Of a DNA stretch of 64,000 nt, positions 8,937 to 35,926 are shown piece after piece. The notes beneath the pieces are model-generated. The model worked only from the letters and a program-made list of their open reading frames with translations, ran no database searches and had not been told where the DNA came from. The DNA is taken from positions 186,001-250,000 of IMG/VR virus record IMGVR_UViG_3300033571_009404; one strand, 5' to 3'. Position numbers and translations under genes: made by a program. Each line of letters starts with the position of its first letter. The first letter of the stretch is position 1.

Positions 8937-10175
8937 TTACGAGGAATAGTACCTCATCGTGTAGGACCGCAGCACGATGTACAGTAACACACCTGTACGA
9001 ATAGCAGCAATAACGCTAGAGTTTTTGATGTTCGTAGCTTTCCTTACAAGTAGTTCAGTGTCTTCGCGAAGCTTGGACAACCCCACGTCAGTACTGCGGC
9101 TACTCATGTAACCACCCTTAAGAGTCGTCAACATTGAAGTATAGTCAGTCTTGCTGTGGATAGCCTCCCTATGTTTGGACAGATACTCAATGGAGTGCAC
9201 AATTGTTTCTAAGAGCACCCTATCGATAATCTCAGCCCCACGCTGACGGTAGTTATTGCTCATCCATTCTAATGTTTCCTCAAAACCATGTTGCGGCATG
9301 GTATTGGAGATATTAGTGATGATTTTCACCAACTCGACACGGATGAAAGAGTTACGATCAGAGATGACGCCGGAGATGTACCGGTAGTATTCTCCAGCCG
9401 ATTTCTTTTTGTCCTTTAAGATCTGTTCACCGTCATGTTCTACGATGAGAGAGGTGGCGATGATCCGGTTGCCGGAATCACGTACACGGAGATACTCGCT
9501 GTACATGAGGCGCAGCATAGCTCGTATGCGACCTTGGACGTCGTTTAACATCTCGACGATCTTACGGTCGTCGCCACCTGTCTGCACCACTTTCCAGTGA
9601 ATGCTTTGGGAACTGATAATCTCCCTTGCCCGATAAAGGAACAGAGCATGCCAGTTACCCGTCTTCTTGATGAGGAACTTACCGGACAGGGTGCTGTTCA
9701 TGGCCTCCGCAATCGATCTTTGACCAGGGTACTTGAAGTACCGGTAATAGCGACTGGTAAAGAACTTGTATTGCAGGATCTGCATGACCGCGATCATCCC
9801 TGCTTCTTTTTGTTGTGGGTGAAGATCCTTAGAAGTAAAGATCTTGTTAACCAGCCAAACGCATGACAAGTTAAATGTGTCCGAAGACACCACCCAGTCT
9901 TTATTGACCGTAGGCAACGCGAGCAAGCGCTCAGTCAGGTAGACCTCATCATTATCGATGATCTCGTTAAACCAGCGGTCACGTTCATTGTCTGTCCAAC
10001 GCACGACGTTCACACCAAAGAGGTTTCCCCCAAAGAATGCAATGTGTTCGTCGTTCTTGTTGACAAACTGTTGTTCAAAGAGTGTGATGTCTTTGATAAG
10101 TTTGGGACCAATTACTAGATCAGCACAGACTTCATCAAACACACCCTTGACTGATAAATCTAGTCGTTGGTCCAT
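8937..10175 (-). CDS. Conserved phiKZ-like hypothetical protein
   Basis: 412-aa ORF with coherent codon use; the FFGGNLFGVNVVRW segment recalls a conserved phiKZ-family protein near terL; function unknown. Confidence 0.7.
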   Translation of the reverse strand: MDQRLDLSVKGVFDEVCADLVIGPKLIKDITLFEQQFVNKNDEHIAFFGGNLFGVNVVRWTDNERDRWFNEIIDNDEVYLTERLLALPTVNKDWVVSSDTFNLSCVWLVNKIFTSKDLHPQQKEAGMIAVMQILQYKFFTSRYYRYFKYPGQRSIAEAMNSTLSGKFLIKKTGNWHALFLYRAREIISSQSIHWKVVQTGGDDRKIVEMLNDVQGRIRAMLRLMYSEYLRVRDSGNRIIATSLIVEHDGEQILKDKKKSAGEYYRYISGVISDRNSFIRVELVKIITNISNTMPQHGFEETLEWMSNNYRQRGAEIIDRVLLETIVHSIEYLSKHREAIHSKTDYTSMLTTLKGGYMSSRSTDVGLSKLREDTELLVRKATNIKNSSVIAAIRTGVLLYIVLRSYTMRYYSS

Positions 10176-11290: not shown

Positions 11291-11508
11291 TCATCCTAGG
11301 GTGGTTGGAGACAGATATTGCTATCTACATGATTGTGGGTAGAATCAAACTAAACGAAGACACATATCACTAGAAGGAGTAGGGTGTCCTAGCAAGATGA
11401 CTTATTAAAGGTCATGAGAGCCTCTAGGAGCTGTTAATTTAGGTTAAGGGTAGATTCTAGTGTCTACTTCAAATGAATGGCTTATAAAGCCTCTAATGGA
11501 GAGTAGTA

Positions 11509-11901
11509 ATGAAGAGGATGATTGAGATCTTTAACGAAGTGTGGGTGACTGCTACTATCACCACTATCTGGAATCGTTACTGGGGAACTGAGAAGGGATT
11601 GTTTGGAGGGATCTTTACCCATCCGGCTTATCCCTTGTGGGTACCACCGGGTGTCATCAGTCAGATGACCAGTCACTATGGCTACCGTATCTTAGTCATT
11701 GGTACTAAACTTGGGTCAGTGGCTGTGTATGTGATTAAGGTAGGTAAGGGAGACGTTGAGGTGCGAGTGTGTGCTCATCCTGATGTCATTAGAAAGAGTG
11801 GCTTAAACGTCAGTAAGATCAGTGAGGCTGATTTACGGTGGATACTGGGCTATGACGATGCCATTGTCAGTTTAAGTACTGAGATGAATATTGAGGAGTA
11901 A
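11509..11901 (+). CDS. Hypothetical protein
   Basis: 130 aa, GGAG SD, downstream of an ACATATCACT motif at 11362. Confidence 0.55.
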   Translation: MKRMIEIFNEVWVTATITTIWNRYWGTEKGLFGGIFTHPAYPLWVPPGVISQMTSHYGYRILVIGTKLGSVAVYVIKVGKGDVEVRVCAHPDVIRKSGLNVSKISEADLRWILGYDDAIVSLSTEMNIEE

Positions 11902-12034
11902 TGTAAAAGTTTACAGTGCTGTATATGTTATGCAGAGACTTGCTATCTCTGTAGGGGCCAATGCCAGTCATTGTCTGTCAAATCTCTAGGGATCCTATGA
12001 CTTATATTTAATATATAGGAGTTATTACATAGGG

Positions 12035-12292
12035 TATACTACACTCCTTTAGAGAGTGTAGAGTAGTGACGACTGAGTGGAGTGTAACGTAACAAAGGAG
12101 GAGTGTACTGAATTGATCAGACACTCTAAGAGACTCTACAGATGTAATGAAACGAAGATAGCTAGCATTGAAGGGTAGGAAGAAAACTCTCTATGAGAAG
12201 AATAGAGATGATAGAGACCTACTCTACAAAAACTCTTTTAGAAAAGATGACATATAACAGGAGAGTTTAAGTACTCTCCCTTTATGACGTCA
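12035..12292. repeat. Non-coding tract of short ACTCT/AGAG(T) direct and inverted repeats
   Basis: At least six ACTC(T/C) copies and several AGAG copies form small hairpins (e.g. TACACACTC-CTTTA-GAGAGTGTA; GGAGAG-TTTAAGTA-CTCTCC); no ORF. Confidence 0.5.
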
Positions 12293-12314
12293 GTTTACAA
12301 GAAAGGATAGAAAG

Positions 12315-12533
12315 ATGGCTACACCTGATAAACCTGATCAGCAGAATAAACCCAACTCCCAGAAGAGATCGTTAAGTAAGATCGATCGTCTGAATGCTCA
12401 TATCGGCTTAGCTACGCTGTATATCCATCATGCTAATAGCTCAATGACGGAATTGAATGACCGTCGTGAGATGATGGCTAAGGCTAAAGCTCACACAAGT
12501 AAAGCTGAAGTACTTTTGAAGAGTGTGGGGTAA
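12315..12533 (+). CDS. Small basic hypothetical protein
   Basis: 72 aa, AAGGA SD; first gene of the accessory array. Confidence 0.55.
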   Translation: MATPDKPDQQNKPNSQKRSLSKIDRLNAHIGLATLYIHHANSSMTELNDRREMMAKAKAHTSKAEVLLKSVG

Positions 12534-13227
12534 GATGATGGAACACGTAACGAAAGATGATCGTGAAGTGGTAATGAACTTTATTACTGACTTCAGTCGC
12601 AGGGTAGGTGCACGTTGGTATGGTTTTGATGAACAGGAGCGTCAACACCATTACCACAAGAAGGAATGGGAATTGGAACATGGTCGGGTAGTATTCACTT
12701 CTCTGAATGCCTTCTTGAATAACTACCGCTTTACTCTGGAGCAGGGTTTCGATGCTGTGCAGTATCGGGTGCGTTTGCCTGAAGGTATTGATGAAGTCAC
12801 TGGCAATAGCTTAATCGCAGAACTGAATAGCTTCCCCTACTTCTATTTTTCGCTGGTAGATTGGATAGAGTCGATCACAATAGCAGATCGACCATTGCCT
12901 GGTTATCATGTTGATAGTTTTCTTGTAGACAGTCAACAGATCATCTACAACTTCATGAAGGACTATGAAGGTAACTATCGCGGATGTTTGGAGTTTACCT
13001 CGAATGCCAATCAGGTGGAAGTACTTGTTGAGCTAGTGCATAGCAACGGGGGTCGTACTGAGTACTTGACACCACTGCTGACTGTGAAGGTTGACATCCC
13101 TGTGATGTTGGACTGCATGAATCGCTTTGGTGGTAAAGTGTACGACACACGCTACAAGTACTTCCGTAGTACGAATGACAACATGGAAGGATTGCTACAC
13201 ATCAGTCAAACTGATGAAAAGCAGTAA
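12523..13227 (+). CDS. Hypothetical protein, paralog of 14397..15107 (start probably 12535/12538)
   Basis: C-terminal FGGKVYDTRYKYFRSTNDNMEGLLH aligns by eye with FGVDVVDTRHLSSLSKNEGMDKLLH. Confidence 0.7.
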   Translation: MWGKMMEHVTKDDREVVMNFITDFSRRVGARWYGFDEQERQHHYHKKEWELEHGRVVFTSLNAFLNNYRFTLEQGFDAVQYRVRLPEGIDEVTGNSLIAELNSFPYFYFSLVDWIESITIADRPLPGYHVDSFLVDSQQIIYNFMKDYEGNYRGCLEFTSNANQVEVLVELVHSNGGRTEYLTPLLTVKVDIPVMLDCMNRFGGKVYDTRYKYFRSTNDNMEGLLHISQTDEKQ

Positions 13228-13255
13228 AGACATTTAACTTTTAAGGAGCCCTATA

Positions 13256-13819
13256 ATGGCTAGTAATGACGAAATCGGTCTTCGCATTGCACGCATTAAC
13301 AGCAATGCTCAATGGATCAAAGAGATCATGGATTTGAATAAGCAGTCCATGACCTCTGGTAACATGGAGTTCGGTAAGTACGACACGGTGGTTACCGACT
13401 ATCCCTTGACGACGGGTGATGTAGTTAAGGTCGTCACCCGTCTGATGATCATCGACGACCCTGCATTGCATCTGTCGTTGGTGTTATTGACCAATGAACG
13501 TGAAGTCGATCCCAGACTGATGAAGCTGGTTAATCTCCTGAAGGATACCTGGGAGGGTCAGTTGCCTGGATTCATCATGCGGGGTCTGTTGATTGATGTC
13601 AAGATCAAAGAACGCGACCATCGTCTGGAGATGGTGTTGCAGAAGATGCAGCAGTTCATCATGGAAGCAAATGCTCAAGGTGGTTTTGACAGCGACTATG
13701 CTTGTGCGTATTCGGATAAGCTGAAAGAACCTCGGCTCTGCATTAACCTGTCTAGCCGTCGTGACAGGAATCCGTTTGCTACCATCACTCTCCCCTATAG
13801 CCACTGGAAGGATCTGTAA
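13256..13819 (+). CDS. Hypothetical protein, accessory paralog family A
   Basis: 187 aa, AAGGAG SD; C-terminal LCINLSSRRDRNPFATITLPY motif. Confidence 0.7.
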   Translation: MASNDEIGLRIARINSNAQWIKEIMDLNKQSMTSGNMEFGKYDTVVTDYPLTTGDVVKVVTRLMIIDDPALHLSLVLLTNEREVDPRLMKLVNLLKDTWEGQLPGFIMRGLLIDVKIKERDHRLEMVLQKMQQFIMEANAQGGFDSDYACAYSDKLKEPRLCINLSSRRDRNPFATITLPYSHWKDL

Positions 13820-14394
13820 TGAATAAAGCCGGTATGGAAAGCCACATGCATGCACTGAACAAGTCGAGCTTGTCGCATGTGGAACGTAATGACAGGAACC
13901 TGGTCTTGCCTGGTCGCCAGACAGTGGAAATGCTCTTTGGTCTGGAGAGCTGTTTCCAAAGTGTACACCCTGTGGATCTGTATCAGAATGGGAAGGTGAT
14001 CACGACGGTCAATGTGGCCACTCGTGTGATTCCTTCTGAAGGTCAGGGGATGTATATCGACTTCCGTTACAAGTGCAACAAGAAAGACATGGGCTTGTGG
14101 GAAGATCTGGAACTGGCTTGGATCAATAACGATCGACGTCTCTGGGACTTCTGGAAACAGATCATAGGCTTTGCATCGTACTACAGTGGACTGAACCATG
14201 TGATTGAGTCCATGGACAACTACGCACACCGCATGCAAGATCAGACGTTTGTGGTGTGCAATGAAGAGATGCTGGTCAATGAAGATCAAGTCACACCGCA
14301 GTTGATCATTTCGTTTTCGATGCGTACGGACCGTATGGCTTTTTATGCCATTGAAATCCCGTATGCTATTTTCAAACGTGTAAAGGAAAATTAA
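13819..14394 (+). CDS. Hypothetical protein, accessory paralog family A
   Basis: 191 aa, TAATG stop/start overlap; C-terminal LIISFSMRTDRMAFYAIEIPY. Confidence 0.7.
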   Translation: MNKAGMESHMHALNKSSLSHVERNDRNLVLPGRQTVEMLFGLESCFQSVHPVDLYQNGKVITTVNVATRVIPSEGQGMYIDFRYKCNKKDMGLWEDLELAWINNDRRLWDFWKQIIGFASYYSGLNHVIESMDNYAHRMQDQTFVVCNEEMLVNEDQVTPQLIISFSMRTDRMAFYAIEIPYAIFKRVKEN

Positions 14395-14396
14395 TC

Positions 14397-15107
14397 ATGG
14401 TATCCGATAAGAATCAAAAAGCAGTTGTTAAGATGGTCAACCAAATCCGTGAGGATATGCAGGTTGGTCATGCTACTGCAAAGTCACGCGGTTGGTATGA
14501 AGTGGTGGTGGACTTCCCGCACACTCTGCAATCGGTCAGGCTGTGCAGTGGTCGTGAAATCACTGATGAAGTGCAGAGTCTGGATTACCACATCGTCGTG
14601 GGCGTACCTGTTCTTCAACATCTGGATCGTGAGCTGTTCGTCAAGCGTTACGGTCACTGGCTGAAGACGGCTCGTGTTTTCATTCCTGCTTTTCTGTACT
14701 GGCTGGAAGATATCAAGGATCGTACTTTCCAACAGATCCCCATGAATCAAAGCATGGAAAGCCATGGCGCCTATGTGGGCTACGCTATCGAAGATGTCAT
14801 GAAGGTCTATGATGGTGAACACCAGACCTATCTGCGTGAAATCACCCTCATCAACGATGCTGAAGAAACCTGGGTGGAAATCGCAATCATGGCCAAAGTG
14901 TTGTCGAATGGCAAGTCGGTCAGTCGCGTTGTCACCATGTTGGGCTTTTCCCTGTCACTGCTGGATGAGTACGTATCGCAGTTCGGTGTAGATGTTGTTG
15001 ACACCCGTCATCTGTCCAGTCTCAGCAAGAATGAAGGCATGGACAAACTGCTTCACTGGCATGACGATGTGAAATGGGAAGGCGAGGTCAACAATGTCCA
15101 AAGCTGA
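14397..15107 (+). CDS. Hypothetical protein, paralog of 12523..13227
   Basis: 236 aa, AAGGA SD; shares the C-terminal FG..V.DTR.....N..M..LLH motif. Confidence 0.7.
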   Translation: MVSDKNQKAVVKMVNQIREDMQVGHATAKSRGWYEVVVDFPHTLQSVRLCSGREITDEVQSLDYHIVVGVPVLQHLDRELFVKRYGHWLKTARVFIPAFLYWLEDIKDRTFQQIPMNQSMESHGAYVGYAIEDVMKVYDGEHQTYLREITLINDAEETWVEIAIMAKVLSNGKSVSRVVTMLGFSLSLLDEYVSQFGVDVVDTRHLSSLSKNEGMDKLLHWHDDVKWEGEVNNVQS

Positions 15108-15687
15108 GGATAAAGTTACAGATCACCTGAATGATCTGATAGCTGTTCTTCACTCCATCAACGTGAAAAGCAATACACCTTCTAATTCACGTGAAGAGTG
15201 TGTGGTGGTTGAGTTCTCGGATGAAACCATTAATAGCTCTGAATTCACTATCGTGGAATTCGACGATGTTTACGAAAGTGATTGCATGACGGTGGGGACT
15301 GCCTGGATCAATACACGTAATCTTCCTGCATTGGGAGACACCCTGTATATCGGTGTGGATTACGTGGGATATGGCAAGGGTGAACAATTCCAAGCACAAT
15401 GCCAATCGTTGATTGGTACTCACTGGGAGTTGGTCGATAAACTGAAGGGATTCAGAAACAGCAAGTATACCCTGCCAGCTCGACTGAAGTACATGGCCGA
15501 GATCCTCGCTGATAGCATTGACAATGCTGGTGATGCTGGTACTACTTTCCAGATAGATGGCAAGTGGGTTGAGAAAGTCAACACTGAGTCCGTTCACGTT
15601 ACTCTTAGCGCCCGGCCTGACCGCCAGGCTTTTATGACCTTAAAATTTACGACTCGCATGTTCAAAGAGTTGTTTGGAGAACAATAA
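15094..15687 (+). CDS. Hypothetical protein, accessory paralog family A
   Basis: 197 aa; C-terminal VHVTLSARPDRQAFMTLKF. Confidence 0.7.
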   Translation: MSKAEDKVTDHLNDLIAVLHSINVKSNTPSNSREECVVVEFSDETINSSEFTIVEFDDVYESDCMTVGTAWINTRNLPALGDTLYIGVDYVGYGKGEQFQAQCQSLIGTHWELVDKLKGFRNSKYTLPARLKYMAEILADSIDNAGDAGTTFQIDGKWVEKVNTESVHVTLSARPDRQAFMTLKFTTRMFKELFGEQ

Positions 15688-16292
15688 TGGCAATGACGTC
15701 TGTATTAACCGATGCACAACGTGCACACCTTCACACCACCATGGCGCACGAGATGGTGCGCGAAATTGTACTCAATGGTGGTAAGCCGATGTTTGGCGGT
15801 GATTACGTTCTGATGAGCATCAATGGCAATGCCGTAGATAGCATCATCTTATCGTCACCTAAAGAAGATATCATCCAGGGCGATTATCTGGGTTATTGTG
15901 TTTCAGTCATGGGTTCAGATCCACTCACCGAATCCGAGCAAGTCATGCTGAATGACCTGACTGATGATCGTACCGAATTCTTCTCAGGCTTCTTCGAATG
16001 GTACTTTGCCAATTACAGCCAGTACACCACAAGTAACTTCTCGGCAGCTGCACTGGCCTTGAACTCAATCCTGAAACGTAATAAGGACATCGATCTCCCG
16101 GTTCAAAAGAACTTGCAGATCGAGTCTGGCGTTGAATGTGTGGTTCCTTACAGGGAAGTTCATCTGAATTTCCACCTGATCAAGAATCGTCAACCGATGC
16201 GTCCCATCGATCAAAAGGTGTTGAGGATCAAGATCCCCTACGCAGCTTTTGTCTTGTACGCAAAGACCAAGGGTTACGAACAAGCAGCATAA
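15687..16292 (+). CDS. Hypothetical protein, accessory paralog family A
   Basis: 201 aa, TAATG overlap; C-terminal VHLNFHL...VLRIKIPYAAF. Confidence 0.7.
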   Translation: MAMTSVLTDAQRAHLHTTMAHEMVREIVLNGGKPMFGGDYVLMSINGNAVDSIILSSPKEDIIQGDYLGYCVSVMGSDPLTESEQVMLNDLTDDRTEFFSGFFEWYFANYSQYTTSNFSAAALALNSILKRNKDIDLPVQKNLQIESGVECVVPYREVHLNFHLIKNRQPMRPIDQKVLRIKIPYAAFVLYAKTKGYEQAA

Positions 16293-16301
16293 AGGATAAA
16301 C

Positions 16302-16919
16302 ATGAACAAGTCCCTCAAAGGCATTGTTGAACTGGAACACTGCCTGCGTTTGACTCTGGAAGGATATCGAGGCGAACGTATCCAGCGTTCGCCTGATGGT
16401 TGTTATCCACCACTCACCTATGGCCATCTGGTCAATGGCCAATTCATGCTGGTGACTTCGCATCGTGAATCGATCTTCTCCCAGAACGTTAGCGTTGAGT
16501 ATGGGAAGTTCATGCTGGCTTATGAACTGACCTACGACTGTGTACCCAACACAGTCACAGAAGACGATCTGTTAACTATGGCGTACGTCGCCAGTGATCT
16601 GGGACATTTCATGCAGGACTTTAGCTTGTGGTTCAGTCAGAACTCAGCTAAGTATATCCACGAGTCGGTCTCCAAGAAGTTCGCCGACATGATCAATGGT
16701 TGTAATGTCCAGATTCATCGCTGGTCTCTTTACAACCGTACTCCGTGGATGTCGATCCCTGTGCAAGAAAAAGCCGACAGTGAAATGAAATCGACCAGCA
16801 TCAACACGAAGGTCATGATCTGTCGATTGAACTACCGGGATGAACGTGGTGAATTGTTCCCCTTCTGGGAAATGGTCATCCCGTGGGTTCTGATCGAGGA
16901 ATACAATAAAACACTGTAA
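16302..16919 (+). CDS. Hypothetical protein, accessory paralog family A
   Basis: 205 aa; C-terminal CRLNYRDERGELFPFWEMVIPW. Confidence 0.7.
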   Translation: MNKSLKGIVELEHCLRLTLEGYRGERIQRSPDGCYPPLTYGHLVNGQFMLVTSHRESIFSQNVSVEYGKFMLAYELTYDCVPNTVTEDDLLTMAYVASDLGHFMQDFSLWFSQNSAKYIHESVSKKFADMINGCNVQIHRWSLYNRTPWMSIPVQEKADSEMKSTSINTKVMICRLNYRDERGELFPFWEMVIPWVLIEEYNKTL

Positions 16920-16926
16920 AGGAAAA

Positions 16927-18237
16927 GTGATGATCAACAACAATACCGCGTTGATTAAGTTCAACGTGAAAGTGTTGGGCAGTCGTATGGAAACTGTTTT
17001 CGAGCGTTGGAAGAATAATGACTCATTCTTCATCAACAAAGAAAAGCCTAGCGATAAACCCGTCACTGGTTATGGTGGTTGCATTTCCATACCAGACACC
17101 AGCACCATGATGTTGATTTCCCAGACTGATCGGGATTTCGATGAAGAAGAGTATTTCCAGTTGCGTGTGGATTGGATGCCGGGTAGTGACAACGAAATCA
17201 TCATCTCTCAAGAAAAGACTCGTCAGTATTTGAATGAGAAGTTCAAGAAGTTGCATTCGATTGCTGACGTTCAAATGCTTCTTCTGAAGTTGAGTCATGA
17301 CATTGCACCGCATCACGAGCGTGCTTGCAATCTTTTGGTTGATCTTGGTCAAGTTGTAACTGACTTCATCGAGGAATACGATAACACTGAGTATGAATCT
17401 GCAACCAGTGTGATCATGAACCAAAACATGATCGACTTCTTGGGTTATGGGACTGATGGTGGTGTGCGGATCTCCTTCATCTCTTCACGTAAGCAAAAAG
17501 AGATTGAAGAAGATTTCAAGAACCGGGAAATGTTCCATCTGCTGTTACCGATGGATTACGTTCAAGAGATCATCGAACGTGATGTACCGTCTGCACGCGC
17601 TGTTCCCAAGGTCAAGAACATCGTCGAAGTTCTGTTCAGTGAAATCCATGATCGGCATAAGCAGTATCTGGAATTCACGGATGTCTCGGAACCAGGCATT
17701 GCAACAGGTCCCTTGGGTAATCGGGAATACCACATTTCTCAACGTTCCTTGTTCGGTGACAATCCCTTAGTCACCTCGGACTACCATTCGAAGTTTGAAC
17801 GGCCGTTGGTTCGCGGAGATGAATGCTGGGATGTCTTGCAGATCAATCTGCGTCACTATGATCCGAAGTGGGAACAGTCTCCAGAGGATCGTGGTAACCA
17901 GCATGACAAGCTGATCGCCCTTTTGGAAGATCCGGCTCGGTTGATCTTATTCTTGACCTACTTGGGCTTTGAACCCAGTATTGAGAAGCTTCCGTATGGT
18001 GAGTTCTTCAAGTGGCTGGGTCCTCGTCTGGTTAAGGCACGGGAAGAAGGAATGAAGATCCAGGTGAACGTGATGCGAATTGCTACCGATCGTCTGGAAC
18101 AACTCAACGTCGAGTTTGCTTATGGTAAATTCACCAGTCATGTCACTGAAGCAACATACCAACATGGTCCTTGGATCTATTTCGGTATCGACGTCGATCA
18201 AATCCAAAAGACCATGAATGAGAAAGGATGGCAATGA
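16927..18237 (+). CDS. Hypothetical protein, probably two family-A domains in tandem
   Basis: 436 aa, about twice the unit length; VRISF...MFHLLLPMDY lies mid-protein and LNVEF...WIYFGIDVDQI at the end. Confidence 0.65.
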   Translation: MMINNNTALIKFNVKVLGSRMETVFERWKNNDSFFINKEKPSDKPVTGYGGCISIPDTSTMMLISQTDRDFDEEEYFQLRVDWMPGSDNEIIISQEKTRQYLNEKFKKLHSIADVQMLLLKLSHDIAPHHERACNLLVDLGQVVTDFIEEYDNTEYESATSVIMNQNMIDFLGYGTDGGVRISFISSRKQKEIEEDFKNREMFHLLLPMDYVQEIIERDVPSARAVPKVKNIVEVLFSEIHDRHKQYLEFTDVSEPGIATGPLGNREYHISQRSLFGDNPLVTSDYHSKFERPLVRGDECWDVLQINLRHYDPKWEQSPEDRGNQHDKLIALLEDPARLILFLTYLGFEPSIEKLPYGEFFKWLGPRLVKAREEGMKIQVNVMRIATDRLEQLNVEFAYGKFTSHVTEATYQHGPWIYFGIDVDQIQKTMNEKGWQ

Positions 18238-18818
18238 GTTACAACATCAGATCGCAACTCATCTCGTTTTCGGGATGTCTGCATTCGGAGCATTGGAGCT
18301 TCCCCAGAGACAACTGCGTCTGCACTCGTGTGATGATGGGTAATCGCAACCTCATGCATTCCAAGCACCTATCCTCCGATAATGCGGTAGTTGAATTGTC
18401 CACAGTACAGGTGATGTTAGATCATGACGGTGGCGCGCTGATTCCCCAATTGGTCATCGGTGTCTGTACTGATCGTCTGGCAAGTCCTGATGAGAACCAT
18501 AGCAACTTCAGGGCTTTCGCAGATCGTCGTAAGTTTATCGACAATCTGAGGAAGTTTGGTCTGACGCTGGATGACACTGAACCTACCAAGACGAGTGAGT
18601 CGTTTTTCCACTACCTGTCCCGTCGTCTGGAAGACTTCGAGTTCAGTGAAGATGAGAATAAGCGGATCCCCACACTGTACGTCAGGGATCAATTCATTTT
18701 CGGTCCAGTGGGGAAGACGGTAACATTGTCTTTCCGTCACGATACAGGTCATGGTACTGGTCTGCCATTTCTGACTATCGCAATGCCACAAGACATCTTC
18801 ACCAAGTACTTCCTGTAA
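18228..18818 (+). CDS. Hypothetical protein, accessory paralog family A
   Basis: 196 aa; C-terminal VTLSFRHD...LPFLTIAMPQDIF. Confidence 0.7.
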   Translation: MAMSYNIRSQLISFSGCLHSEHWSFPRDNCVCTRVMMGNRNLMHSKHLSSDNAVVELSTVQVMLDHDGGALIPQLVIGVCTDRLASPDENHSNFRAFADRRKFIDNLRKFGLTLDDTEPTKTSESFFHYLSRRLEDFEFSEDENKRIPTLYVRDQFIFGPVGKTVTLSFRHDTGHGTGLPFLTIAMPQDIFTKYFL

Positions 18819-18842
18819 GACCAAAACAAAAGGAGAGTAGTT

Positions 18843-19634
18843 ATGAGTATTGAAAACAATCAAGACGATCTGGTATCCATCCCAACGTCTTTGAATGTCC
18901 CTGTTGATGTTCTTATGCTCTTTTATAAGACCATCAGCAAGTGGGACGCCAAGTCGGATCAAGAGCGTGAATTGGTTACTCAGTTGAAAGCCATTCGCGA
19001 TCAGCGTTTGACGGTGTGGAAGAATGATTGCACCACTCTGTTCAAATACCTCTTGCGTGTGTTCGCTGATGTCAATGCTGTCCAGCAATCTGCAATTGCA
19101 AGTCTCAAGTTGGACGTTGGTCTGAATGACACTATGGATGAATACAAGAAATTGCATTCCATCTATAAATCCAGCCTGACGACTTTCGTTACCAACATTC
19201 ACATTCCAACCGAACCCGGTCAGTTCGATAGCTTGGAAATGCGTGTGGAGATATGCCCTACGTTCTACAAGGAATTCGCTGAAGGTGAAACAGCCCATGA
19301 CGATCTTGCTATCCTCAAGGATATGGTCATGGGGGTGTCTAACCCAGTCGAACATCGCATCTTGTATCAACTGTTGTCAATGATTCAAAAGTTGTGTCAA
19401 ATCAACTCCATTATCGGCATTCCCGGTCCGAAGTCTACCAACCGTGTGATGGAATTGGATGCGACTGACATTGGTGATGAACCTCGTCTGTTCGTTTTGA
19501 ATGTCGAAGGTCGTCAAGGGCAAAGCATCATCACTCTGGCTACTCTGGCGGTATCCTCAAAGGAGTTTCCCCTCATCAGTAGCGCCTTCTTTAAGAAGAA
19601 AAACCCTGACGAAGAACTTGCAGTGGTAGCTTGA
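18843..19634 (+). CDS. Hypothetical protein (helical/coiled N-half)
   Basis: 263 aa, AAGGAG SD. Confidence 0.7.
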   Translation: MSIENNQDDLVSIPTSLNVPVDVLMLFYKTISKWDAKSDQERELVTQLKAIRDQRLTVWKNDCTTLFKYLLRVFADVNAVQQSAIASLKLDVGLNDTMDEYKKLHSIYKSSLTTFVTNIHIPTEPGQFDSLEMRVEICPTFYKEFAEGETAHDDLAILKDMVMGVSNPVEHRILYQLLSMIQKLCQINSIIGIPGPKSTNRVMELDATDIGDEPRLFVLNVEGRQGQSIITLATLAVSSKEFPLISSAFFKKKNPDEELAVVA

Positions 19635-19765
19635 TGTAAATCATTATGTCTTCTGGAAAGAAGAACTAGATTTCAGCCTGCAATAAATTACTAGCGATGG
19701 CTATGTATTAGAAAGCGTCGCTAGTAACACTCTCTCTAAGTCTCTACGTAAACAAGGAATTCGCA

Positions 19766-20356
19766 ATGACCGTGCAATCTTCCCAAGACCGCTTGTCCCT
19801 CGAACTCAAGAGCTTTGGCTTCGACAAGTACCAAACTCAGTTCCTGGACGCACGTGTGTTCAGCAGGCATAGCGCAGATCTGGTCGCCATCTACGATCGT
19901 GCTCGCTACAACCTCAAGACCCTGGGTCTGAACGACAACATCGACATCGACCTCACGCTTTCGGTCAACGAGCATGGTGTCAAAGAAGCCGCCAAAGTAC
20001 TGTGTGATGAGAATCTGGTTGGCTCGCTCAACACCATCAACACCCCCTCGACCTATATCGAGGTATTCACCGGAAAGGATATGGCGCACAAGATCGCCAA
20101 TGTCCTGAGCAAAGCCGGTAGCAATCCCTGCTATGGTAACAATACCACCTTCATTGATCTGCAAGCAGTTAAGAAGTTCTTCGTGGACTTCGTAATTGAT
20201 ATGGATCAATTCGGTGGTGTGACGTGGGGTATCGCACCGTCTGGCATTGGTCTGTCCATCGACATGATCTATCAAGGTCAGGTGGTCATGAATCTGCACA
20301 TCGGCACGCCTAACTGGAAACACCATATGGCTACCATCGAAGCAGAAGCAGCGTAA
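19766..20356 (+). CDS. Hypothetical protein with highly-expressed-type codon bias, own transcription unit
   Basis: 196 aa, AAGGA SD, C-ending codon bias; upstream inverted repeat and downstream terminator. Confidence 0.75.
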   Translation: MTVQSSQDRLSLELKSFGFDKYQTQFLDARVFSRHSADLVAIYDRARYNLKTLGLNDNIDIDLTLSVNEHGVKEAAKVLCDENLVGSLNTINTPSTYIEVFTGKDMAHKIANVLSKAGSNPCYGNNTTFIDLQAVKKFFVDFVIDMDQFGGVTWGIAPSGIGLSIDMIYQGQVVMNLHIGTPNWKHHMATIEAEAA

Positions 20357-20369
20357 ACCTGCGCGTATT

Positions 20370-20400
20370 CCCCAGCACTTAAATGGTGCTGGGGTTTATG
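20370..20400 (+). terminator. Terminator-like hairpin followed by TTTATG
   Basis: CCCCAGCAC-TTAAATG-GTGCTGGGG-TTTATG. Confidence 0.75.
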
Positions 20401-20421
20401 ACACTTTGAAAAGGTTTCACT

Positions 20422-21117
20422 ATGGCAATAAAAGATGATGCATTTGATAACTTCAAGGCTGCTCTCTTGAATGTTCAAATCGAAAGTGTCGTCGGAGCAG
20501 AGATTGCAGCCGAAAAGCAAATCGAGCTAATGAACTTGGCTCGACTGCGTGAAGCGTTGACGACGTTGCGCCACTACGCGGTGATGGTTTTTGAATCACC
20601 AGAATTTGCAAAGGATACCCGTCATCTTAAATCGGAGCACTATCAAGTTACTTTGGTAGGGGAGCGCGTTTCATGTCCGATGATTATGACCTTTGCACGC
20701 GATTTTGATTCTCGCGTTACGATGGGGGATTTGGGAGAATGTGAGGTAACGGTGCAAAGCCAGCCTTATACGCTTCCTGACGGAGAACTGATTAACTGTT
20801 TAGCAAAGCAGGCTAAGAAGTTTACCAAGGGCGATCTTATTCACATGTCGCCTATGCACTGGGTCAATCACGCTTTAAACGCAAGACGACGCATGGTCGA
20901 TGTAATCTATGGGAAAGACTTACTCGATCCAAGTGCTGAAATGAATCAACTGATCAGCCATATCTCTGCATTTCTTGGTACCGTTACTCAAGGTCAAGCA
21001 CCTAGCCTCAGTAACGTACCAGTCAAGAGCTTGGCCAAATATAACATGAAAGATCCGGGTTCCTTCTTCTTGGCGGTCGTCTTACGTGGACGCGTGATTT
21101 TTACAATCCGCATTTGA
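20422..21117 (+). CDS. Hypothetical protein
   Basis: 231-aa ORF; no motif recognised. Confidence 0.65.
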   Translation: MAIKDDAFDNFKAALLNVQIESVVGAEIAAEKQIELMNLARLREALTTLRHYAVMVFESPEFAKDTRHLKSEHYQVTLVGERVSCPMIMTFARDFDSRVTMGDLGECEVTVQSQPYTLPDGELINCLAKQAKKFTKGDLIHMSPMHWVNHALNARRRMVDVIYGKDLLDPSAEMNQLISHISAFLGTVTQGQAPSLSNVPVKSLAKYNMKDPGSFFLAVVLRGRVIFTIRI

Positions 21118-21125
21118 GGGATATA

Positions 21126-21839
21126 ATGAGCGATATCAGGGGATCAAAGGAGTTCGTTAAGGACTTGATTGAGCCAGAGAAACGACTGTTCAATTTCGTG
21201 ATGCAGCAACTCAGTCACGAAATGGATCGTAGTAGTCGTCTTAACCAGAATTGGTTGCGTGCTCTGGCAGACATCAAGCGTGCCTATCAAGCAATCGTCA
21301 TTGACGCTGTTGCCGATGGGTTAAAATATCGAAGGATGAATGCGGTTCGACCTGACCAACCGGTCAAGTCAGCAATGGACTTAATTTCCCAAAAGCGTGG
21401 TGGTATGAAAATCCATCATTGCTACTCGGTCCAGAACTACGCAGTGGAGTGTTTGCGTGAACCGTTGAAATCCGATAACCGTTTTGGCTACAAGCTGGAA
21501 ATTCATCACTGGGTCCCGTTGGCCTATAAGGACTGCATTGATGAATGGAACTTCCCGGTCAAGCCTGACAAAAATCTGTCTTCGATTCTGAATGCTGTTC
21601 GAGTGCGCTTTGCAGGGATGGTTTACCGTAAGAGTGCCGTCGGTCATCCGGAGAATATGGGTAAGGTGATTACTTCAACTGTTGATGCTTTTTGCGACTT
21701 CATCGTTGCTTCACACGAGTCTTTGGAACACGTGTCGTATAAGCGTCATCTGCTGAAGGATCCTAAAGAACTGGAACAGATGGATGTCATGGTCACACAA
21801 GGTAACAACGAACTGCTGTGTGGTTTTTCTGCCTATTGA
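21126..21839 (+). CDS. Hypothetical protein (ATG at 21126 preferred over TTG at 21114)
   Basis: GAGGG SD before ATG 21126, same frame as the track ORF. Confidence 0.65.
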   Translation: MSDIRGSKEFVKDLIEPEKRLFNFVMQQLSHEMDRSSRLNQNWLRALADIKRAYQAIVIDAVADGLKYRRMNAVRPDQPVKSAMDLISQKRGGMKIHHCYSVQNYAVECLREPLKSDNRFGYKLEIHHWVPLAYKDCIDEWNFPVKPDKNLSSILNAVRVRFAGMVYRKSAVGHPENMGKVITSTVDAFCDFIVASHESLEHVSYKRHLLKDPKELEQMDVMVTQGNNELLCGFSAY

Positions 21840-21841
21840 CG

Positions 21842-22727: not shown

Positions 22728-22908
22728 TAAGTTCTCCTAAGCAAGGGATTCCAAATTATTGAAGACACTTATTATTACACTGAGCATATAAAAGAAAGGT
22801 CTCTATAGGATTGATTCCCTATCCTGTGTATTGCTCATAGTCGTGTTTTACAAGCATTGGCTAACATATGTAGTTGGTCTTATATCTCAACCGAAAAAGG
22901 AAACAAGC

Positions 22909-23901
22909 ATGTCCGATAAAATCAAAGGCAATGTCAGGGTCTACTGTGCAGGCGGCCTCGGTGCAAACCTGGCTTCGATCTTGCTGCGCGACACCAAGCA
23001 GCCCGCAGCAGACGGCTTCGCCAATCTGGACGTCTGCCTGATCGATACCTCCAAGTCGAACCTGATCGACTCCGCCGTCCCCGAAGCCAATCGCTATCTG
23101 GTGGAAGATCGTGACGGTTCTGGTGGTGTGCGTTCCGAGAACGCTGAAGCCATCATCGAGCGCAAGCTGGAAGTGCTGCAGAAGTTCAAGCCCTCTGATG
23201 ATCTGAACATCGTCATCTCCTCGGGTGGTGGTGGTTCCGGTTCGGTCATCGCACCGGTGCTGGTCGGTGAACTGTTGAACCGTGGCCTGAACGTGATCGT
23301 GCTGATGGTCGGTTCCCAAGAAACCGTCACCGAAGCCAACAACACTCTGAAGACCCTGATGTCGTACGAAGGCGTGTGGAAGGCTACCGGTCAGCCGGTG
23401 GTGATCTCCTACACCGAGAACGATGCCAAGAACAGCCACAAGGACAACGACGAACTGATCGTCCAACGTGTGACTGCACTGCGTGTGCTGTTCAGCCGCG
23501 AGAACCACGGTCTGGATTCCATGGACCTGACCAACTGGCTGCACTTCAACAAGGTGACCTCCTTCCAGAACTCCGGTATCGCTGGCCTGTCGATCGCTGA
23601 CAAGGCTACCGACATGGGCGATGGCAAGGGTATCCTGTCGGTGGCTACGCTGTCGGCTGATGTCGAAACCTCCAGCCTGCCGTACCTGGTCGAATACCAA
23701 CGCAAGGGTCTGACCAAGCTGAAGGACAAGATCGATGGTCTGCCGATCCACTACCTCATCTCGGATGGCTTCCTGGCTGACCGTGTGAGTCGTATCGAAA
23801 AGACCCTGAACGACTTCGATGCCAATCGCGACGCTCGCGTCAAGACTGGTCCCCTGTTCAACCGCAAGGGTGAAAAGGGTGAAGGCGGTCTGGTGTTCTA
23901 A
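22909..23901 (+). CDS. phuZ: Phage tubulin PhuZ
   Basis: T1 loop CAGGLGANL, DTS, tubulin signature SGGGGSGS, C-terminal tail ending GLVF; strong codon bias. AAGGA SD favours ATG 22909 over the track start 22831. Confidence 0.93.
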   Translation: MSDKIKGNVRVYCAGGLGANLASILLRDTKQPAADGFANLDVCLIDTSKSNLIDSAVPEANRYLVEDRDGSGGVRSENAEAIIERKLEVLQKFKPSDDLNIVISSGGGGSGSVIAPVLVGELLNRGLNVIVLMVGSQETVTEANNTLKTLMSYEGVWKATGQPVVISYTENDAKNSHKDNDELIVQRVTALRVLFSRENHGLDSMDLTNWLHFNKVTSFQNSGIAGLSIADKATDMGDGKGILSVATLSADVETSSLPYLVEYQRKGLTKLKDKIDGLPIHYLISDGFLADRVSRIEKTLNDFDANRDARVKTGPLFNRKGEKGEGGLVF

Positions 23902-33676: not shown

Positions 33677-33829
33677 TTCTAGTAAAAATTTACTGCACTG
33701 ATGCTTATGTTATGGAAAAGAGTAACATCTTACCGGTACCTACCTAGAGTTGAAACATACTCTAGGTAAGGAACATATATGTGTCTCGGTCTTTTCAAGC
33801 CCCAAACTTGATTCAAAAGAAATGTAGAT

Positions 33830-33839
33830 ACATATCACT
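33830..33839 (+). promoter_or_regulatory. Putative early (virion RNAP) promoter element ACATATCACT upstream of chimallin
   Basis: Same motif at 11362; ACATATTAC at 42669, TATTAC at 22773, TATATCATT at ~47844. Resembles the phiKZ early promoter TATTAC. Confidence 0.5.
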
Positions 33840-33925
33840 AAATTGATCATAGTAGCGGTAGTCTATGCATCAATGTTTGTTTGCGCAAACAATCATTTCT
33901 TAATTAACACGCAAAGGAAGAAAAC

Positions 33926-35830
33926 ATGGCTCTGCAAACCGATGGTGAAAACAACAACCAATCCGGTCAACACCAACAGCGCGCTGCACAACCGCAATCG
34001 CAGCCGCAACAACCCCGCGCTGCTCAACAAGAAGCCTCCGCCGGTCTGAAGTCGTTCCGTAACCTGTCGAGCCTGGGTCCTCGTCTGGGTAATCGCAACC
34101 TGTACTCGGAGTACGTCACCAACACCGTCGACAAGCTGAAGGAAGTCATCGGCAAGGCGATCCAAAGCCAAGAGTACGACCACGACGTCATCGCCATGCC
34201 GGAAGACGCCAACCTGGGTATCTCCGTGGTCGCTGTGACCGTGGCCTCCAAGACCAAGCGTAACCTGGGTGTGGCATACTTCACCCTGCTGCTCGAAAAG
34301 ACCGGCACCGCACTGCCGCTGCGTACCGAGCGCGTGCCGACCCCGAAGGGCGAAATCACCGTGGACGTTCTGCGTACCACCAGCGATCGCTACAACGTGC
34401 CGATGAAGAAGATGGTGGAAGAACAGCTGCGTCGCCACTATCCGAGCCAGAAGCTGATCTCCGCCGACGGCACCCGCGTTCCTGCCGACTTCAACCCGGA
34501 CGACAAGGTCGCCGTCAACGAACTGGCCATCGCCTCGTACTTCGCTGCTGGTACGGTGCTGACCGAGTCCGACGAGAACTTCCGCGACATCAACCTGCAT
34601 GACATCGCTCGCGATTCACAGCTGCAACTGCGCCCGACCTTCGCTTCCACCGTGGAAGTCAATGCTGTCGGCGAACCGATTCGCTCCGATCTCTCGCTGG
34701 ATCTGACGGCGCAATCGACCCAGACCTCCGGTATCCTGGGTGAAGAACAGATCAACAACCTGTACAAGCTGTCGGCGTTCATCGACTTCCTGTACTTCCC
34801 GCGTGAAGAACAAGGCGCTCTGGGTGGTGGCTTCGGTCAACAGCAACAGACGCAAGTTCTGCGGACGCAGAAATATCTGCCGCGCATCGTGATCACCAAG
34901 GCCGAGTCCTATGGTCCGATGAGCCTGGGCTTCAACCTGCTGGGTATCGCTCAGTCGGTGGCTCTGCTGGCTCAACGCAATGCATGGATGCAAGCATACC
35001 TGCCGCGCATCGGTGCCAACGTGCGCGAAATCCAGGACGTCGGCTTCATGAACATCGAAGCCAACCTGGAAGAAAACCAATCCGGCTTCGGTCAACACGT
35101 CGATACCAGCGCTGCTGACTTCGATGAAGCTCGCATGGTGCAGTACCTGACGATGTTCACCCGTCCGGATGTCAACCCGATCCTGTCGCAAGACATCCCG
35201 CTGTTCGATCCGTCGACCTGGTACCTGACCCCGCTGCTGGCTGCCGCTACCGGTAACCCGCAAGCCGAGAAGCACCTGATCAAGGTGGCCAACGAGCTGA
35301 CCAACTACAACTTCGAGAAGTACTTCCCCGAAGGTTCGAAGTTCGTGGTCAACACCGGTGAGCACATCCACCTGGGCTGGTACATCGACCAAGACGGTAC
35401 CCGCCGCGACATCCGCGACATCGATCTGAACGCAGTCCTGGCACGCCAGGGTCACATCGATCCGAAGATGGGCGAGCGCTGGACCGAGACCTTCCTGGCT
35501 GCCGACGTTCCGGAACAGCTGCGCCTGGCTGATCGCAAGAAGATCATCGACGGCATCGCACGCAACGCAACCTACACCGGTTACGCTGTGCGCATCAGCT
35601 ACACCACGGTGGCACTGAACGCGCTGGCCCAAGGCTGCCGCGACGCCGGTCTGGATGTGAAGAACGTCCTGGCCTACGCCAACCTGAACGGCACCCAACG
35701 TCATCGCGCTGCTCTGGACAATGGTCTGCTGGCTCAAGCTGGTGCTGTCGGCGCCTCGTTCCTGAACCAAGGTACGGCTGCCGTCAACGCTGGTGGTTTC
35801 GGTATCGGCACCACCAACCGCTGGAACTAA
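33926..35830 (+). CDS. chmA: Chimallin, major phage nuclear shell protein (phiKZ gp54-like)
   Basis: 634 aa, disordered Q-rich N-tail; segments GEPIRSDL, FIDFLY, PRIVIT, DVGFM, NTGEHIHLGWY.D.DG..RDIRD.D and TYTGYAVRI match remembered chimallin sequence; extreme codon bias; directly upstream of the nvRNAP beta' subunit. Confidence 0.9.
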   Translation: MALQTDGENNNQSGQHQQRAAQPQSQPQQPRAAQQEASAGLKSFRNLSSLGPRLGNRNLYSEYVTNTVDKLKEVIGKAIQSQEYDHDVIAMPEDANLGISVVAVTVASKTKRNLGVAYFTLLLEKTGTALPLRTERVPTPKGEITVDVLRTTSDRYNVPMKKMVEEQLRRHYPSQKLISADGTRVPADFNPDDKVAVNELAIASYFAAGTVLTESDENFRDINLHDIARDSQLQLRPTFASTVEVNAVGEPIRSDLSLDLTAQSTQTSGILGEEQINNLYKLSAFIDFLYFPREEQGALGGGFGQQQQTQVLRTQKYLPRIVITKAESYGPMSLGFNLLGIAQSVALLAQRNAWMQAYLPRIGANVREIQDVGFMNIEANLEENQSGFGQHVDTSAADFDEARMVQYLTMFTRPDVNPILSQDIPLFDPSTWYLTPLLAAATGNPQAEKHLIKVANELTNYNFEKYFPEGSKFVVNTGEHIHLGWYIDQDGTRRDIRDIDLNAVLARQGHIDPKMGERWTETFLAADVPEQLRLADRKKIIDGIARNATYTGYAVRISYTTVALNALAQGCRDAGLDVKNVLAYANLNGTQRHRAALDNGLLAQAGAVGASFLNQGTAAVNAGGFGIGTTNRWN

Positions 35831-35862
35831 TCTACCCTCCAAGGTAGTTTAGCGAAATAAAT

Positions 35863-35884
35863 GGGGAGGGCTTCGGCCTTCCTC
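35863..35884 (+). terminator. UUCG hairpin after chmA
   Basis: GGGGAGGGC-TTCG-GCCTTCCTC followed by a T-rich tract. Confidence 0.7.
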
Positions 35885-35926
35885 ATTTATCCCTTAGTTT
35901 TTCTTTTTCTTTTAAGGGAGTCAACA

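What the first reader, a model, noticed from the sequence alone, without database searches (positions are those of the whole stretch)
13256..18818. Tandem array of about eight highly diverged paralogous domains of an unknown family
Seen: co-oriented, translationally coupled ORFs of 187-205 aa, plus one double-length ORF. All end in a hydrophobic strand, a short R/D-rich turn, then an aromatic-x-x-[ILM]-x-[ILM]-P strand and short helix: INLSSRRDRNPFATITLPY, ISFSMRTDRMAFYAIEIPY, VTLSARPDRQAFMTLKF, LRIKIPY, FWEMVIPW, FLTIAMPQ. Several share a mid-protein F/W-rich helix (EFFSGFFEWY, HFMQDFSLWF, GEFFKWL, ESFFHYL). Inference: one scaffold amplified and diversified, as expected for host-range or anti-defence effectors; it may be an undescribed effector family. 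Similarity was judged by eye only.
Basis: partly seen in the sequence, partly recalled or inferred. Interest (0 to 1): 0.72.

Follow-up and report, generated by a model that had tools for sequence, protein, structure and literature searches.

The report
Fast-evolving early gene array, jumbo phage
A nucleus-forming jumbo phage carries a tightly packed operon of very diverged sister genes, apparently switched on early with the phage-nucleus shell gene, that share a small C-terminal structural motif and match no known protein family or fold; their function is unknown and is most likely host takeover or counter-defence.

Summary
The window is part of a 310-kb Chimalliviridae (nucleus-forming) jumbo phage from metagenomes.

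Homology is proven by sequence for only part of the array:
- 13256, 13819 and 15094 are true paralogues (family A).
- 12523 and 14397 form a second family (B).
- 15687 and 18228 join A at marginal significance.
- 16302 and both halves of 16927 are linked only by the C-terminal strand-turn-strand-Pro-helix motif.

That motif is strongly enriched. It occurs in 5 of 8 array proteins here and in 5 of 6 sequence-orphan proteins in two related phages, against 2-5% of background proteins.

The operon starts behind a conserved 11-nt promoter-like motif that also precedes the chimallin gene, which suggests early transcription. It lies in a hypervariable island; the equivalent island in phiKZ holds the RNase E inhibitor Dip. 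An effector role is inferred, not shown. Interest is moderate.

The parts
11338..11373 (+). Promoter-like motif ATCAAA-N12-AGACACATATCACTA, 136 nt upstream of the first gene of the operon
   Evidence: It is one of about 13 intergenic copies in the genome, all on the + strand. Another copy lies 85 nt upstream of chimallin, at window about 33806-33841. Variants sit at the same position in relatives L035 and L038.
11509..11901 (+). Gene F, 130 aa, first gene of the operon. It is conserved in four relatives and is not a member of the motif family.
   Evidence: phmmer gives 1e-40 to 1e-11 against L035, L038 and L041. There is no Pfam or PHROG hit.
11902..12314 (+). Non-coding leader with conserved stem-loops (CAGAGA-CTTGCTA-TCTCTG and GGAGAG-N8-CTCTCC)
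   Evidence: The sequence is conserved between the window and L035. The TTGCTATCT hairpin core occurs only twice in intergenic DNA of the genome, on either side of gene F. There is no Rfam match.
12523..13227 (+). Family B paralogue 1 (234 aa; the true start may be a few codons downstream of the GTG)
   Evidence: It pairs with 14397-15107 (BLASTP 2.4e-5; phmmer 6e-4) and with L038 16347-17057 (HHalign 2.2e-5).
13256..13819 (+). Family A paralogue 1 (187 aa)
   Evidence: Recruited by the family A HMM at E 5.9e-7. It ranks first in the leave-one-out test.
13819..14394 (+). Family A paralogue 2 (191 aa); the protein that was modelled
   Evidence: Its orthologue is L035 3683-4276 (31% identity, 2e-35). 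phmmer to the L035 orthologue of 15094 gives 1.4e-6. The AF2 model has pLDDT 68 and pTM 0.70.
14397..15107 (+). Family B paralogue 2 (236 aa); it overlaps the next gene by 14 nt
15094..15687 (+). Family A paralogue 3 (197 aa)
   Evidence: Its orthologues are L035 4904-5500 (36% identity, 6e-38) and L038 15004-15609. ESMFold2 gave pLDDT 74-77 for it.
15687..16292 (+). Probable family member (201 aa), marginal by sequence
   Evidence: It ranks first of about 1,165 ORFs in the leave-one-out test, E 0.011. Profile A aligns in register at the C-terminus, E 0.01. The motif is LRIKIPY.
16302..16919 (+). Possible family member (205 aa), linked only by the C-terminal motif FWEMVIPW
   Evidence: It matches the regex but was not recovered by the HMM or by HHalign.
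16927..18237 (+). Double-length ORF (436 aa), best read as two fused units
   Evidence: Residues 53-208 align to the stand-alone 196-aa gene L038 14306-14896 (HHalign 1.3e-3 over 138 columns). An internal FHLLLP motif at about residues 200-210 marks the end of unit 1. The second half has only by-eye support. Strain SNPs are 5 synonymous to 1 non-synonymous.
18228..18818 (+). Probable family member (196 aa)
   Evidence: It ranks first of 351 with the family A C-terminal HMM. Profile-profile E is 8.8e-4, in register. The AF2 model failed (pLDDT 40).
18843..19634 (+). 263-aa ORFan, unassigned; no counterpart in the relatives
   Evidence: It has no significant similarity to any array member.
19766..21839 (+). 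Three distal operon genes (196, 231 and 241 aa; groups C, D and E). They are conserved in relatives and are not part of the motif family.
   Evidence: They are 41-50% identical to the L035 genes. Profile A against C, D and E gives only noise.

Best explanation
The region is one long operon, about 11,340-21,840 on the + strand, in a hypervariable island of a nucleus-forming jumbo phage. The island lies between two conserved genes: a phrog_2921 homologue on one side and DUF7484 with the tubulin PhuZ on the other.

Most of the middle of the operon (12523-18818) consists of soluble, mildly acidic alpha+beta proteins of about 190-235 aa. They arose by repeated tandem duplication, and in one case by fusion of two units, and have diverged so fast that only the folding core is still recognisable. 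That core is a C-terminal beta-hairpin whose last strand ends in Pro, followed by a short helix.

The operon is probably transcribed early, by the injected virion RNA polymerase, from the same promoter type as the chimallin gene. The most likely role is a diversifying set of host-takeover or counter-defence proteins that bind variable host or competitor targets early in infection.

Shown: the array, families A and B, the motif enrichment, orphan status, copy-number variation and the promoter motif. Inferred: common descent of all units, early timing and effector function.
For: - Phage identity: chimallin, PhuZ, nvRNAP subunits and TerL are in the window, and the record is a 310,114-bp genome with direct terminal repeats.
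- Families A and B are proven by sequence.
- The C-terminal module is shared by A, B and the orphans but not by operon genes C-F.
- Syntenic arrays with different unit numbers occur in relatives L035, L038, L040 and L041.
- Array orthologues are 31-50% identical or undetectable, where flanking genes are 70-85% identical.
- Family A folds to alpha-beta3-alpha3-beta3-alpha with pTM 0.70. The C-terminal strands are among the most confident parts (block pLDDT 77-85). A second predictor gave pLDDT 74-77 for 15094.
- The 11-nt motif ACATATCACTA has about 13 intergenic copies, all on the + strand. One lies before the operon and one before chimallin/nvRNAP, and its position is conserved in relatives.
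- Conserved ~10-nt motifs upstream of early operons are the known signature of vRNAP promoters in RNAP-encoding jumbo phages (PMC7598289).
- In phiKZ-like phages the equivalent island holds Dip/gp37, an RNase E inhibitor with an unprecedented alpha+beta fold and no homologues (PMC4980113).
- SNPs between strains are mostly synonymous, so the ORFs are maintained as coding genes.
Against: - No sequence test recovers 16302 or either half of 16927.
- The only structural test of a non-A member failed, so one fold for all units is unproven.
- Early timing rests on a motif alone. There are no transcript data, and the RNA-library contigs cannot be told apart from DNA.
- No homology or structural match gives any functional clue.
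- The predicted B-A interaction gave no answer.
- More distant relatives show no motif enrichment in their islands (3/104 against 5/172).
Confidence: 0.45

Rival explanations
1. The array is a mosaic rather than one family. Families A and B are real small paralogue groups. The other ORFs (15687, 16302, 16927, 18228, 18843) are unrelated orphan genes collected in a recombination-prone island, and the C-terminal hairpin-Pro-helix is a common, convergent way to end a small alpha+beta domain.
For: - Leave-one-out HMMs fail for 16302, 16927a, 16927b and 18228.
- The AF2 model of 18228 built from the pooled alignment has pLDDT 40, as expected if that alignment mixes unrelated proteins.
- In relatives the island also takes up unrelated genes (GIY-YIG endonuclease, RNA ligase).
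- 2-5% of background proteins carry the regex by chance.
Against: - The motif is at least 10-fold enriched, and it was confirmed on an independent set: 5 of 6 orphans in L035 and L038.
- In-register C-terminal best alignments occur in 17% of array pairs against 1.4% of controls.
- Lengths are uniform, at about 175-205 aa.
- The order of secondary-structure elements in the weak 18228 model matches family A.
- 18228 ranks first in two separate tests.
Confidence: 0.25
2. The proteins are virion-packaged internal or ejected proteins, like the phiKZ inner-body paralogue family. They would be delivered with the DNA rather than made early.
For: Chimalliviruses do carry tandem paralogous families of injected head proteins (PMC12676376; bioRxiv 2024.03.24.586471). 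One gene of the equivalent phiKZ island is annotated as a virion structural protein.
Against: - No match to PF12699. The genome's own PF12699 genes lie elsewhere, at genome 263976-266110.
- The operon carries the promoter motif shared with chimallin, and no copy of that motif in the window precedes its structural genes.
- Such poor conservation is unusual for structural proteins.
Confidence: 0.1
3. The conserved C-terminal element is mainly a shared docking or sorting handle, not a folding core. Candidates are a common phage partner, the nuclear import machinery or a chaperone. Otherwise unrelated or freely diverging cargo domains would carry it.
For: It is the only element conserved across A, B and the orphans. 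It always lies at or near the extreme C-terminus, or at the end of unit 1 in the fused ORF.
Against: In the family A model the two strands lie inside the six-stranded sheet with high local confidence, which fits a structural core better than an exposed tag. No partner has been identified.
Confidence: 0.1

Closest known systems
phiKZ Dip (gp37) and its neighbours gp32-gp38
   Same: - Same kind of genomic place: a run of same-strand orphan genes between the phrog_2921 homologue and PhuZ.
- Dip is a soluble alpha+beta protein with no structural or sequence homologues, even among phiKZ-like phages, and it acts on a host machine, RNase E (PMC4980113).
   Different: - No sequence similarity.
- Dip did not appear among the structural matches.
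- The phiKZ proteins are longer (256-289 aa) and are not detectably paralogous to each other.
- An RNase E target was not tested here.
phiKZ_IP (PF12699) internal head / injected protein paralogue family
   Same: It is a tandem, diverged paralogue family specific to chimalliviruses, and several of its members are dispensable (PMC12676376).
   Different: - The array does not match PF12699.
- The true PF12699 genes of this genome lie about 57 kb away, outside the window.
- Those proteins are larger, packaged in the virion and processed by proteolysis.
vRNAP-dependent early operons of RNAP-encoding jumbo phages
   Same: A ~10-nt conserved motif lies upstream of operons that include chimallin/nvRNAP and many unknown genes, as described for phiKZ, AR9 and others (PMC7598289).
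   Different: The motif sequence (ACATATCACTA, with an upstream TCAAA) is specific to this lineage. Its activity and timing have not been measured.

Membership tests
phiKZ_IP (PF12699) | Match to the Pfam model above its gathering score | tested here: not met
   No hit at E <= 0.1 for any of ten array proteins. The model finds two other genes in the same genome at 115 and 36 bits.
Dip-like RNase E inhibitors (phiKZ gp37) | Sequence similarity to Dip | tested here: not met
   phmmer of the phiKZ-type island proteins, including the 273-aa Dip homologue, against all array proteins gave no hit at E <= 1.
Dip-like RNase E inhibitors (phiKZ gp37) | Structural similarity to the Dip crystal structure | tested here: not met
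Dip-like RNase E inhibitors (phiKZ gp37) | Binding and inhibition of the host RNA degradosome | not testable with these tools
   The host is unknown, and this needs biochemistry.
Chimallivirus early (vRNAP) operon | Conserved ~10-nt promoter motif shared with known early genes | tested here: met
   ACATATCACTA lies upstream of the operon and of chimallin/nvRNAP beta. A variant sits at the same position in L035 and L038.
Chimallivirus early (vRNAP) operon | Transcripts appear early and without new protein synthesis | not testable with these tools
   The phage is uncultured. The contigs from an RNA library cannot be told apart from DNA.
Single paralogous family covering all units 13256-18818 | Significant sequence or profile similarity linking every unit | tested here: inconclusive
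   Met for 13256, 13819 and 15094. Marginal for 15687 and 18228. Not met for 16302 and 16927a/b. Pooled score shift against controls: p about 0.003.
Single paralogous family covering all units 13256-18818 | Same predicted fold | tested here: inconclusive
   Family A: pTM 0.70. 18228: pLDDT 40 and pTM 0.23. The order of helices and strands is similar, but the second model is unreliable.

The most novel reading that the evidence does not exclude
The array encodes a previously unseen alpha+beta fold that one chimallivirus lineage has amplified into about ten early-expressed units. The conserved C-terminal hairpin-Pro-helix would be a common handle that docks all of them to one phage or host partner, for example at the early infection vesicle or the phage nucleus. 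The hypervariable remainder would sample different host or competitor targets. In effect this would be a phage-encoded diversifying effector library.
Probability: 0.12. Interest if true: 0.75.

Novelty: new variant of a known kind. Interest (0 to 1): 0.42.

Why it matters
Nucleus-forming jumbo phages are candidates for phage therapy and a model for viral compartmentalisation, yet most of their early genes have no known function. This locus is a clean case of rapid gene birth by duplication, at a fixed genomic place next to the cytoskeleton and shell genes, apparently under the same early promoter as the shell protein. The model has no match to any solved or predicted structure searched.

If the proteins are host-takeover or counter-defence factors, they would add a new family to the very few characterised in these phages, of which Dip is the nearest by position. 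They would also give a handle on how such phages adapt to different hosts. If they prove dispensable, the locus still marks a hypervariable island that could be used for engineering.

Tried and rejected
- Pfam, PHROGs and NCBIfam scans of all array proteins gave nothing.
- megablast and tblastn against 50,697 phage records gave nothing.
- Word-indexed searches of 5.8 billion proteins with 13256 and 16927 returned only the query's own sequence.
- A viral-contig scan with 13256 gave nothing. A metagenome-contig scan with DUF7484 gave nothing.
- Syntenic islands of Burkholderia phage FLC9 and of 27 IMG/VR relatives (30-54% identity in the anchor gene) show no sequence similarity to the array and no motif enrichment.
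- The exhaustive HMMER search also returned a 7,339-aa protein (P0006). It is a repeat-inflated false positive: 28 weak stretches in a surface-repeat protein.
- ESM Atlas look-ups gave a poor model (pLDDT 0.38) or none, and no useful neighbours.
- A profile search of PDB sequences gave nothing.
- Complex prediction of B2 with A3, prompted by the conserved B-then-A gene order, gave no answer.
- I checked the genome for further family members among other ~200-aa proteins behind early-type promoters. The weak HMM hits there lack the motif, so I rejected them.
- The 740-bp gap in the L038 array holds no recognisable pseudogene.
- Laying metagenome contigs on the region gave only fragments, with no joints or copy-number variants.
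Full report
WHAT THE WINDOW IS. The window is bases 186,001-250,000 of a 310,114-bp virus record with direct terminal repeats. It encodes chimallin (33926-35830), the tubulin PhuZ (22831-23901), non-virion RNA polymerase subunits, a divergent DNA polymerase and the large terminase. It is therefore a nucleus-forming jumbo phage of the Chimalliviridae. The closest cultured relative is Burkholderia phage FLC9, with only 31.5% identity in chimallin. The same phage turns up in biofilm, wastewater and rhizosphere metagenomes. The host is unknown.

THE OBSERVATION. The ORFs are as described. On the + strand they run:
- 11509-11901 (130 aa)
- a 620-nt spacer that contains a doubtful 72-aa ORF
- 12523 (234 aa), 13256 (187), 13819 (191), 14397 (236), 15094 (197), 15687 (201), 16302 (205), 16927 (436), 18228 (196), 18843 (263), 19766 (196), 20422 (231) and 21114 (241)

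Junctions are overlaps of 1-14 nt or gaps of 2-28 nt through 18843; only the last two gaps are larger, at 131 and 65 nt. All quoted peptides are present.

IS IT ONE FAMILY? Pairwise BLASTP and phmmer within the genome detect only 12523~14397, plus short in-register C-terminal matches among 13256, 13819 and 15094. Leave-one-out HMMs ranked 13256, 13819, 15094 and 15687 first among about 1,165 ORFs of the genome (E 0.0008-0.011). They failed for 16302, both halves of 16927, and 18228.

An exhaustive HMMER search of 1.84 billion representative proteins with a four-member profile returned the window's own proteins, one repeat-inflated false positive, and two real homologues, P0008 and P0009. Those two led to a related phage contig, L035. 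A search with the conserved neighbour DUF7484 then led to L038 (a 297.7-kb genome), L040 and L041.

With these relatives the picture sharpens:
- Family A = 13256, 13819 and 15094 plus three orthologues. Cross-paralogue phmmer gives 1.4e-6 and 2e-4, and the iterated HMM recruits 13256 at 5.9e-7.
- Family B = 12523 and 14397 plus two orthologues.
- Genes 19766, 20422, 21114 and 11509 each have clear orthologues but are unrelated to A and B.
- 15687, 16302, 16927, 18228 and 18843 stay sequence orphans. So do the genes at the corresponding positions in L035 (5503, 6023, 6603) and L038 (14896, 14309, 13745).

THE C-TERMINAL MODULE. On an independent set it matches 5 of 6 orphans in L035 and L038. 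The background is 15 of 315 other genes of this genome and 10 of 578 ORFs from other chimallivirus loci. At a 5% background rate, 5 of 6 has a binomial probability of about 2e-6.

Further tests agree:
- An HMM of family A's last 42 residues ranks 18228 first of 351 proteins, in register.
- In single-sequence HHalign, the best local alignment is an in-register C-terminal one in 20 of 121 orphan-orphan and orphan-A pairs, against 13 of 900 array-control pairs. Overall scores are shifted upward (Mann-Whitney p about 0.003).
- Profile A aligns in register at the C-terminus with 18228 (E 8.8e-4), 15687 (0.01), r6023, r5503, r14309, the 16927a group and family B. It gives only noise against groups C, D, E and F.

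So the strand-turn-strand-Pro-helix element is a real shared feature of the units between 12523 and 18818. I consider full-length common descent likely but unproven for 16302 and 16927b.

THE DOUBLE-LENGTH ORF. Residues 53-208 of 16927 align over 138 columns to the stand-alone 196-aa L038 gene 14306-14896 (E 1.3e-3). An FHLLLP motif followed by a helix ends that first unit. The second half begins with an N-terminal helix pattern like that of the first half and its relatives, and ends with a hairpin and helix. This fits two units fused by loss of a stop codon. The second unit rests on resemblance by eye only. Between strains the ORF shows 5 synonymous changes and 1 non-synonymous change, so it is maintained as a coding gene.

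STRUCTURE. AlphaFold2 with a 7-row family A alignment gave mean pLDDT 68 and pTM 0.70 for 13819. The topology is alpha - three strands - three helices - three strands - alpha. The central helices and the C-terminal strands are the most confident parts. ESMFold2 independently gave pLDDT 74-77 for 15094, but only 31-34 for family B.

No library contains a match:
- Foldseek against PDB, BFVD, AFDB clusters and Swiss-Prot: all TM below 0.31.
- ESM Atlas: TM 0.41 at best.

The fold is either new or the model is imprecise. The second and last AF2 job, 18228 with an 11-row alignment of orphans, failed (pLDDT 40). Its order of secondary-structure elements resembles family A, but that is weak evidence.

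CONTEXT AND EVOLUTION. The array fills the space between a conserved divergent pair (phrog_2921, 8937-10175, and a 199-aa gene) and the convergent DUF7484 gene followed by PhuZ. Between the window and L035 the flanking genes are 70-85% identical. Array orthologues are 31-50% identical or unrecognisable.

Unit content differs between phages:
- This phage: B-A-A-B-A, then about six orphan units.
- L035: A-B-A, then three orphans.
- L038: B, a gap, A, then three orphans.
- L040 and L041: smaller, different sets, plus a GIY-YIG endonuclease and, in L040, an RNA ligase.

The order B-then-A, with overlapping stop and start codons, recurs. That suggested a B-A complex, but the prediction gave no answer. 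In phiKZ-type phages the equivalent island holds gp32-gp38, including Dip/gp37. Dip is an RNase E inhibitor with an unprecedented alpha+beta fold and no homologues (PMC4980113). It has no detectable similarity to the proteins here. The known chimallivirus paralogue family PF12699 lies elsewhere in this genome.

REGULATION. K-mer enrichment in upstream regions found ACATATCACTA, usually preceded by TCAAA about 12 nt upstream. There are about 13 intergenic copies, all on the + strand. One copy lies 136 nt before gene 11509, the operon start. One lies 85 nt before chimallin, which is followed directly by an nvRNAP subunit. The others precede unknown genes and a polymerase-like gene, and none precedes a recognised structural gene. 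Variants of the motif sit at the same position in L035 and L038.

In RNAP-encoding jumbo phages a conserved ~10-nt motif upstream of early operons is the signature of virion-RNAP promoters (PMC7598289). I therefore infer early transcription of the array. This is an inference from sequence only.

HOW IT MOST LIKELY WORKS. I commit to the following at moderate confidence (0.45). The array is a set of early-made, cytoplasmic, fast-diversifying alpha+beta proteins derived from one or two ancestral units. They act by binding host or competitor components. The conserved C-terminal hairpin and helix serve as the folding core. The rival readings are:
- a mosaic of unrelated orphans with a convergent C-terminus (0.25)
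- virion or injected proteins (0.10)
- the C-terminal element as a docking or sorting handle (0.10)

VERDICT. The proteins belong to no described family, and family A may have a new fold. The general phenomenon, lineage-specific tandem paralogues in a hypervariable early region of a jumbo phage, is familiar. Interest is moderate.

Noticed in passing
window 11338-11373 and about 33806-33841; genome-wide copies listed: A promoter-like motif, TCAAA-N11-12-(A/G)NACATATCACTA, has about 13 intergenic copies, all on the + strand. One precedes chimallin/nvRNAP. It is probably this lineage's early (virion RNAP) promoter.
   Followed up: partly
window 11310-11332 and 11930-11955: Two similar hairpins share the core TTGCTATCT (AGATA-TTGC-TATCT and CAGAGA-CTTGCTA-TCTCTG) and bracket gene 11509-11901. 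They are the only intergenic copies of that core in the genome, and they are conserved in L035 (the first also in L038). They may be an operator or a processing or termination signal.
   Followed up: partly
window 11902-12314: A ~400-nt non-coding leader is conserved with L035, including a GGAGAG...CTCTCC stem-loop just before the next start codon. It has no Rfam match. In L035 the same leader runs directly into the first family A gene, so the 72-aa ORF, B1 and A1 of this phage look like an insertion or duplication behind it.
   Followed up: partly
window 34001-36000: The chimallin gene region has 58.5% G+C, against about 44-51% elsewhere in the window. This is a marked compositional outlier for a core gene.
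   Followed up: no
L005 (Burkholderia phage FLC9) 10279-10893, gp14: A 204-aa protein in the syntenic island has CVYKVEEDHAGFTLTIMPLTEGLQKY near its C-terminus. This is the same strand-turn-strand-Pro-helix pattern, so it may be a very distant member in a cultured phage.
   Followed up: no
L017 7649-9012 (- strand): Two adjacent paralogues of about 218 aa in the island of a more distant IMG/VR relative end in MRVTYYLP and LRIVYILP. This may be another local expansion with a similar C-terminus.
   Followed up: no
L040 10876-12841 and L041 1417-2343: In two relatives the same island holds a GIY-YIG homing-endonuclease-like gene next to DUF7484; L040 also holds a T4-type RNA ligase. This marks the island as a hotspot for gene gain.
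   Followed up: no
window 15013-15020 (codons 206-208 of ORF 14397-15107): In a biofilm-metagenome strain that is otherwise 96-100% identical, five clustered base changes turn L-S-S into Q-H-C. Changes in ORF 16927 are almost all synonymous.
   Followed up: partly
genome 263976-266110 (outside the window; loci L033, L034): Two adjacent genes match PF12699 (phiKZ internal head protein family) at 115 and 36 bits. This is the genome's copy of the known chimallivirus paralogue family.
   Followed up: no
protein P0006: A 7,339-aa repeat protein scored E 2e-30 against the family A profile by summing 28 weak repeat matches. It is a false positive and shows how repeats inflate whole-sequence HMMER scores.
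   Followed up: yes
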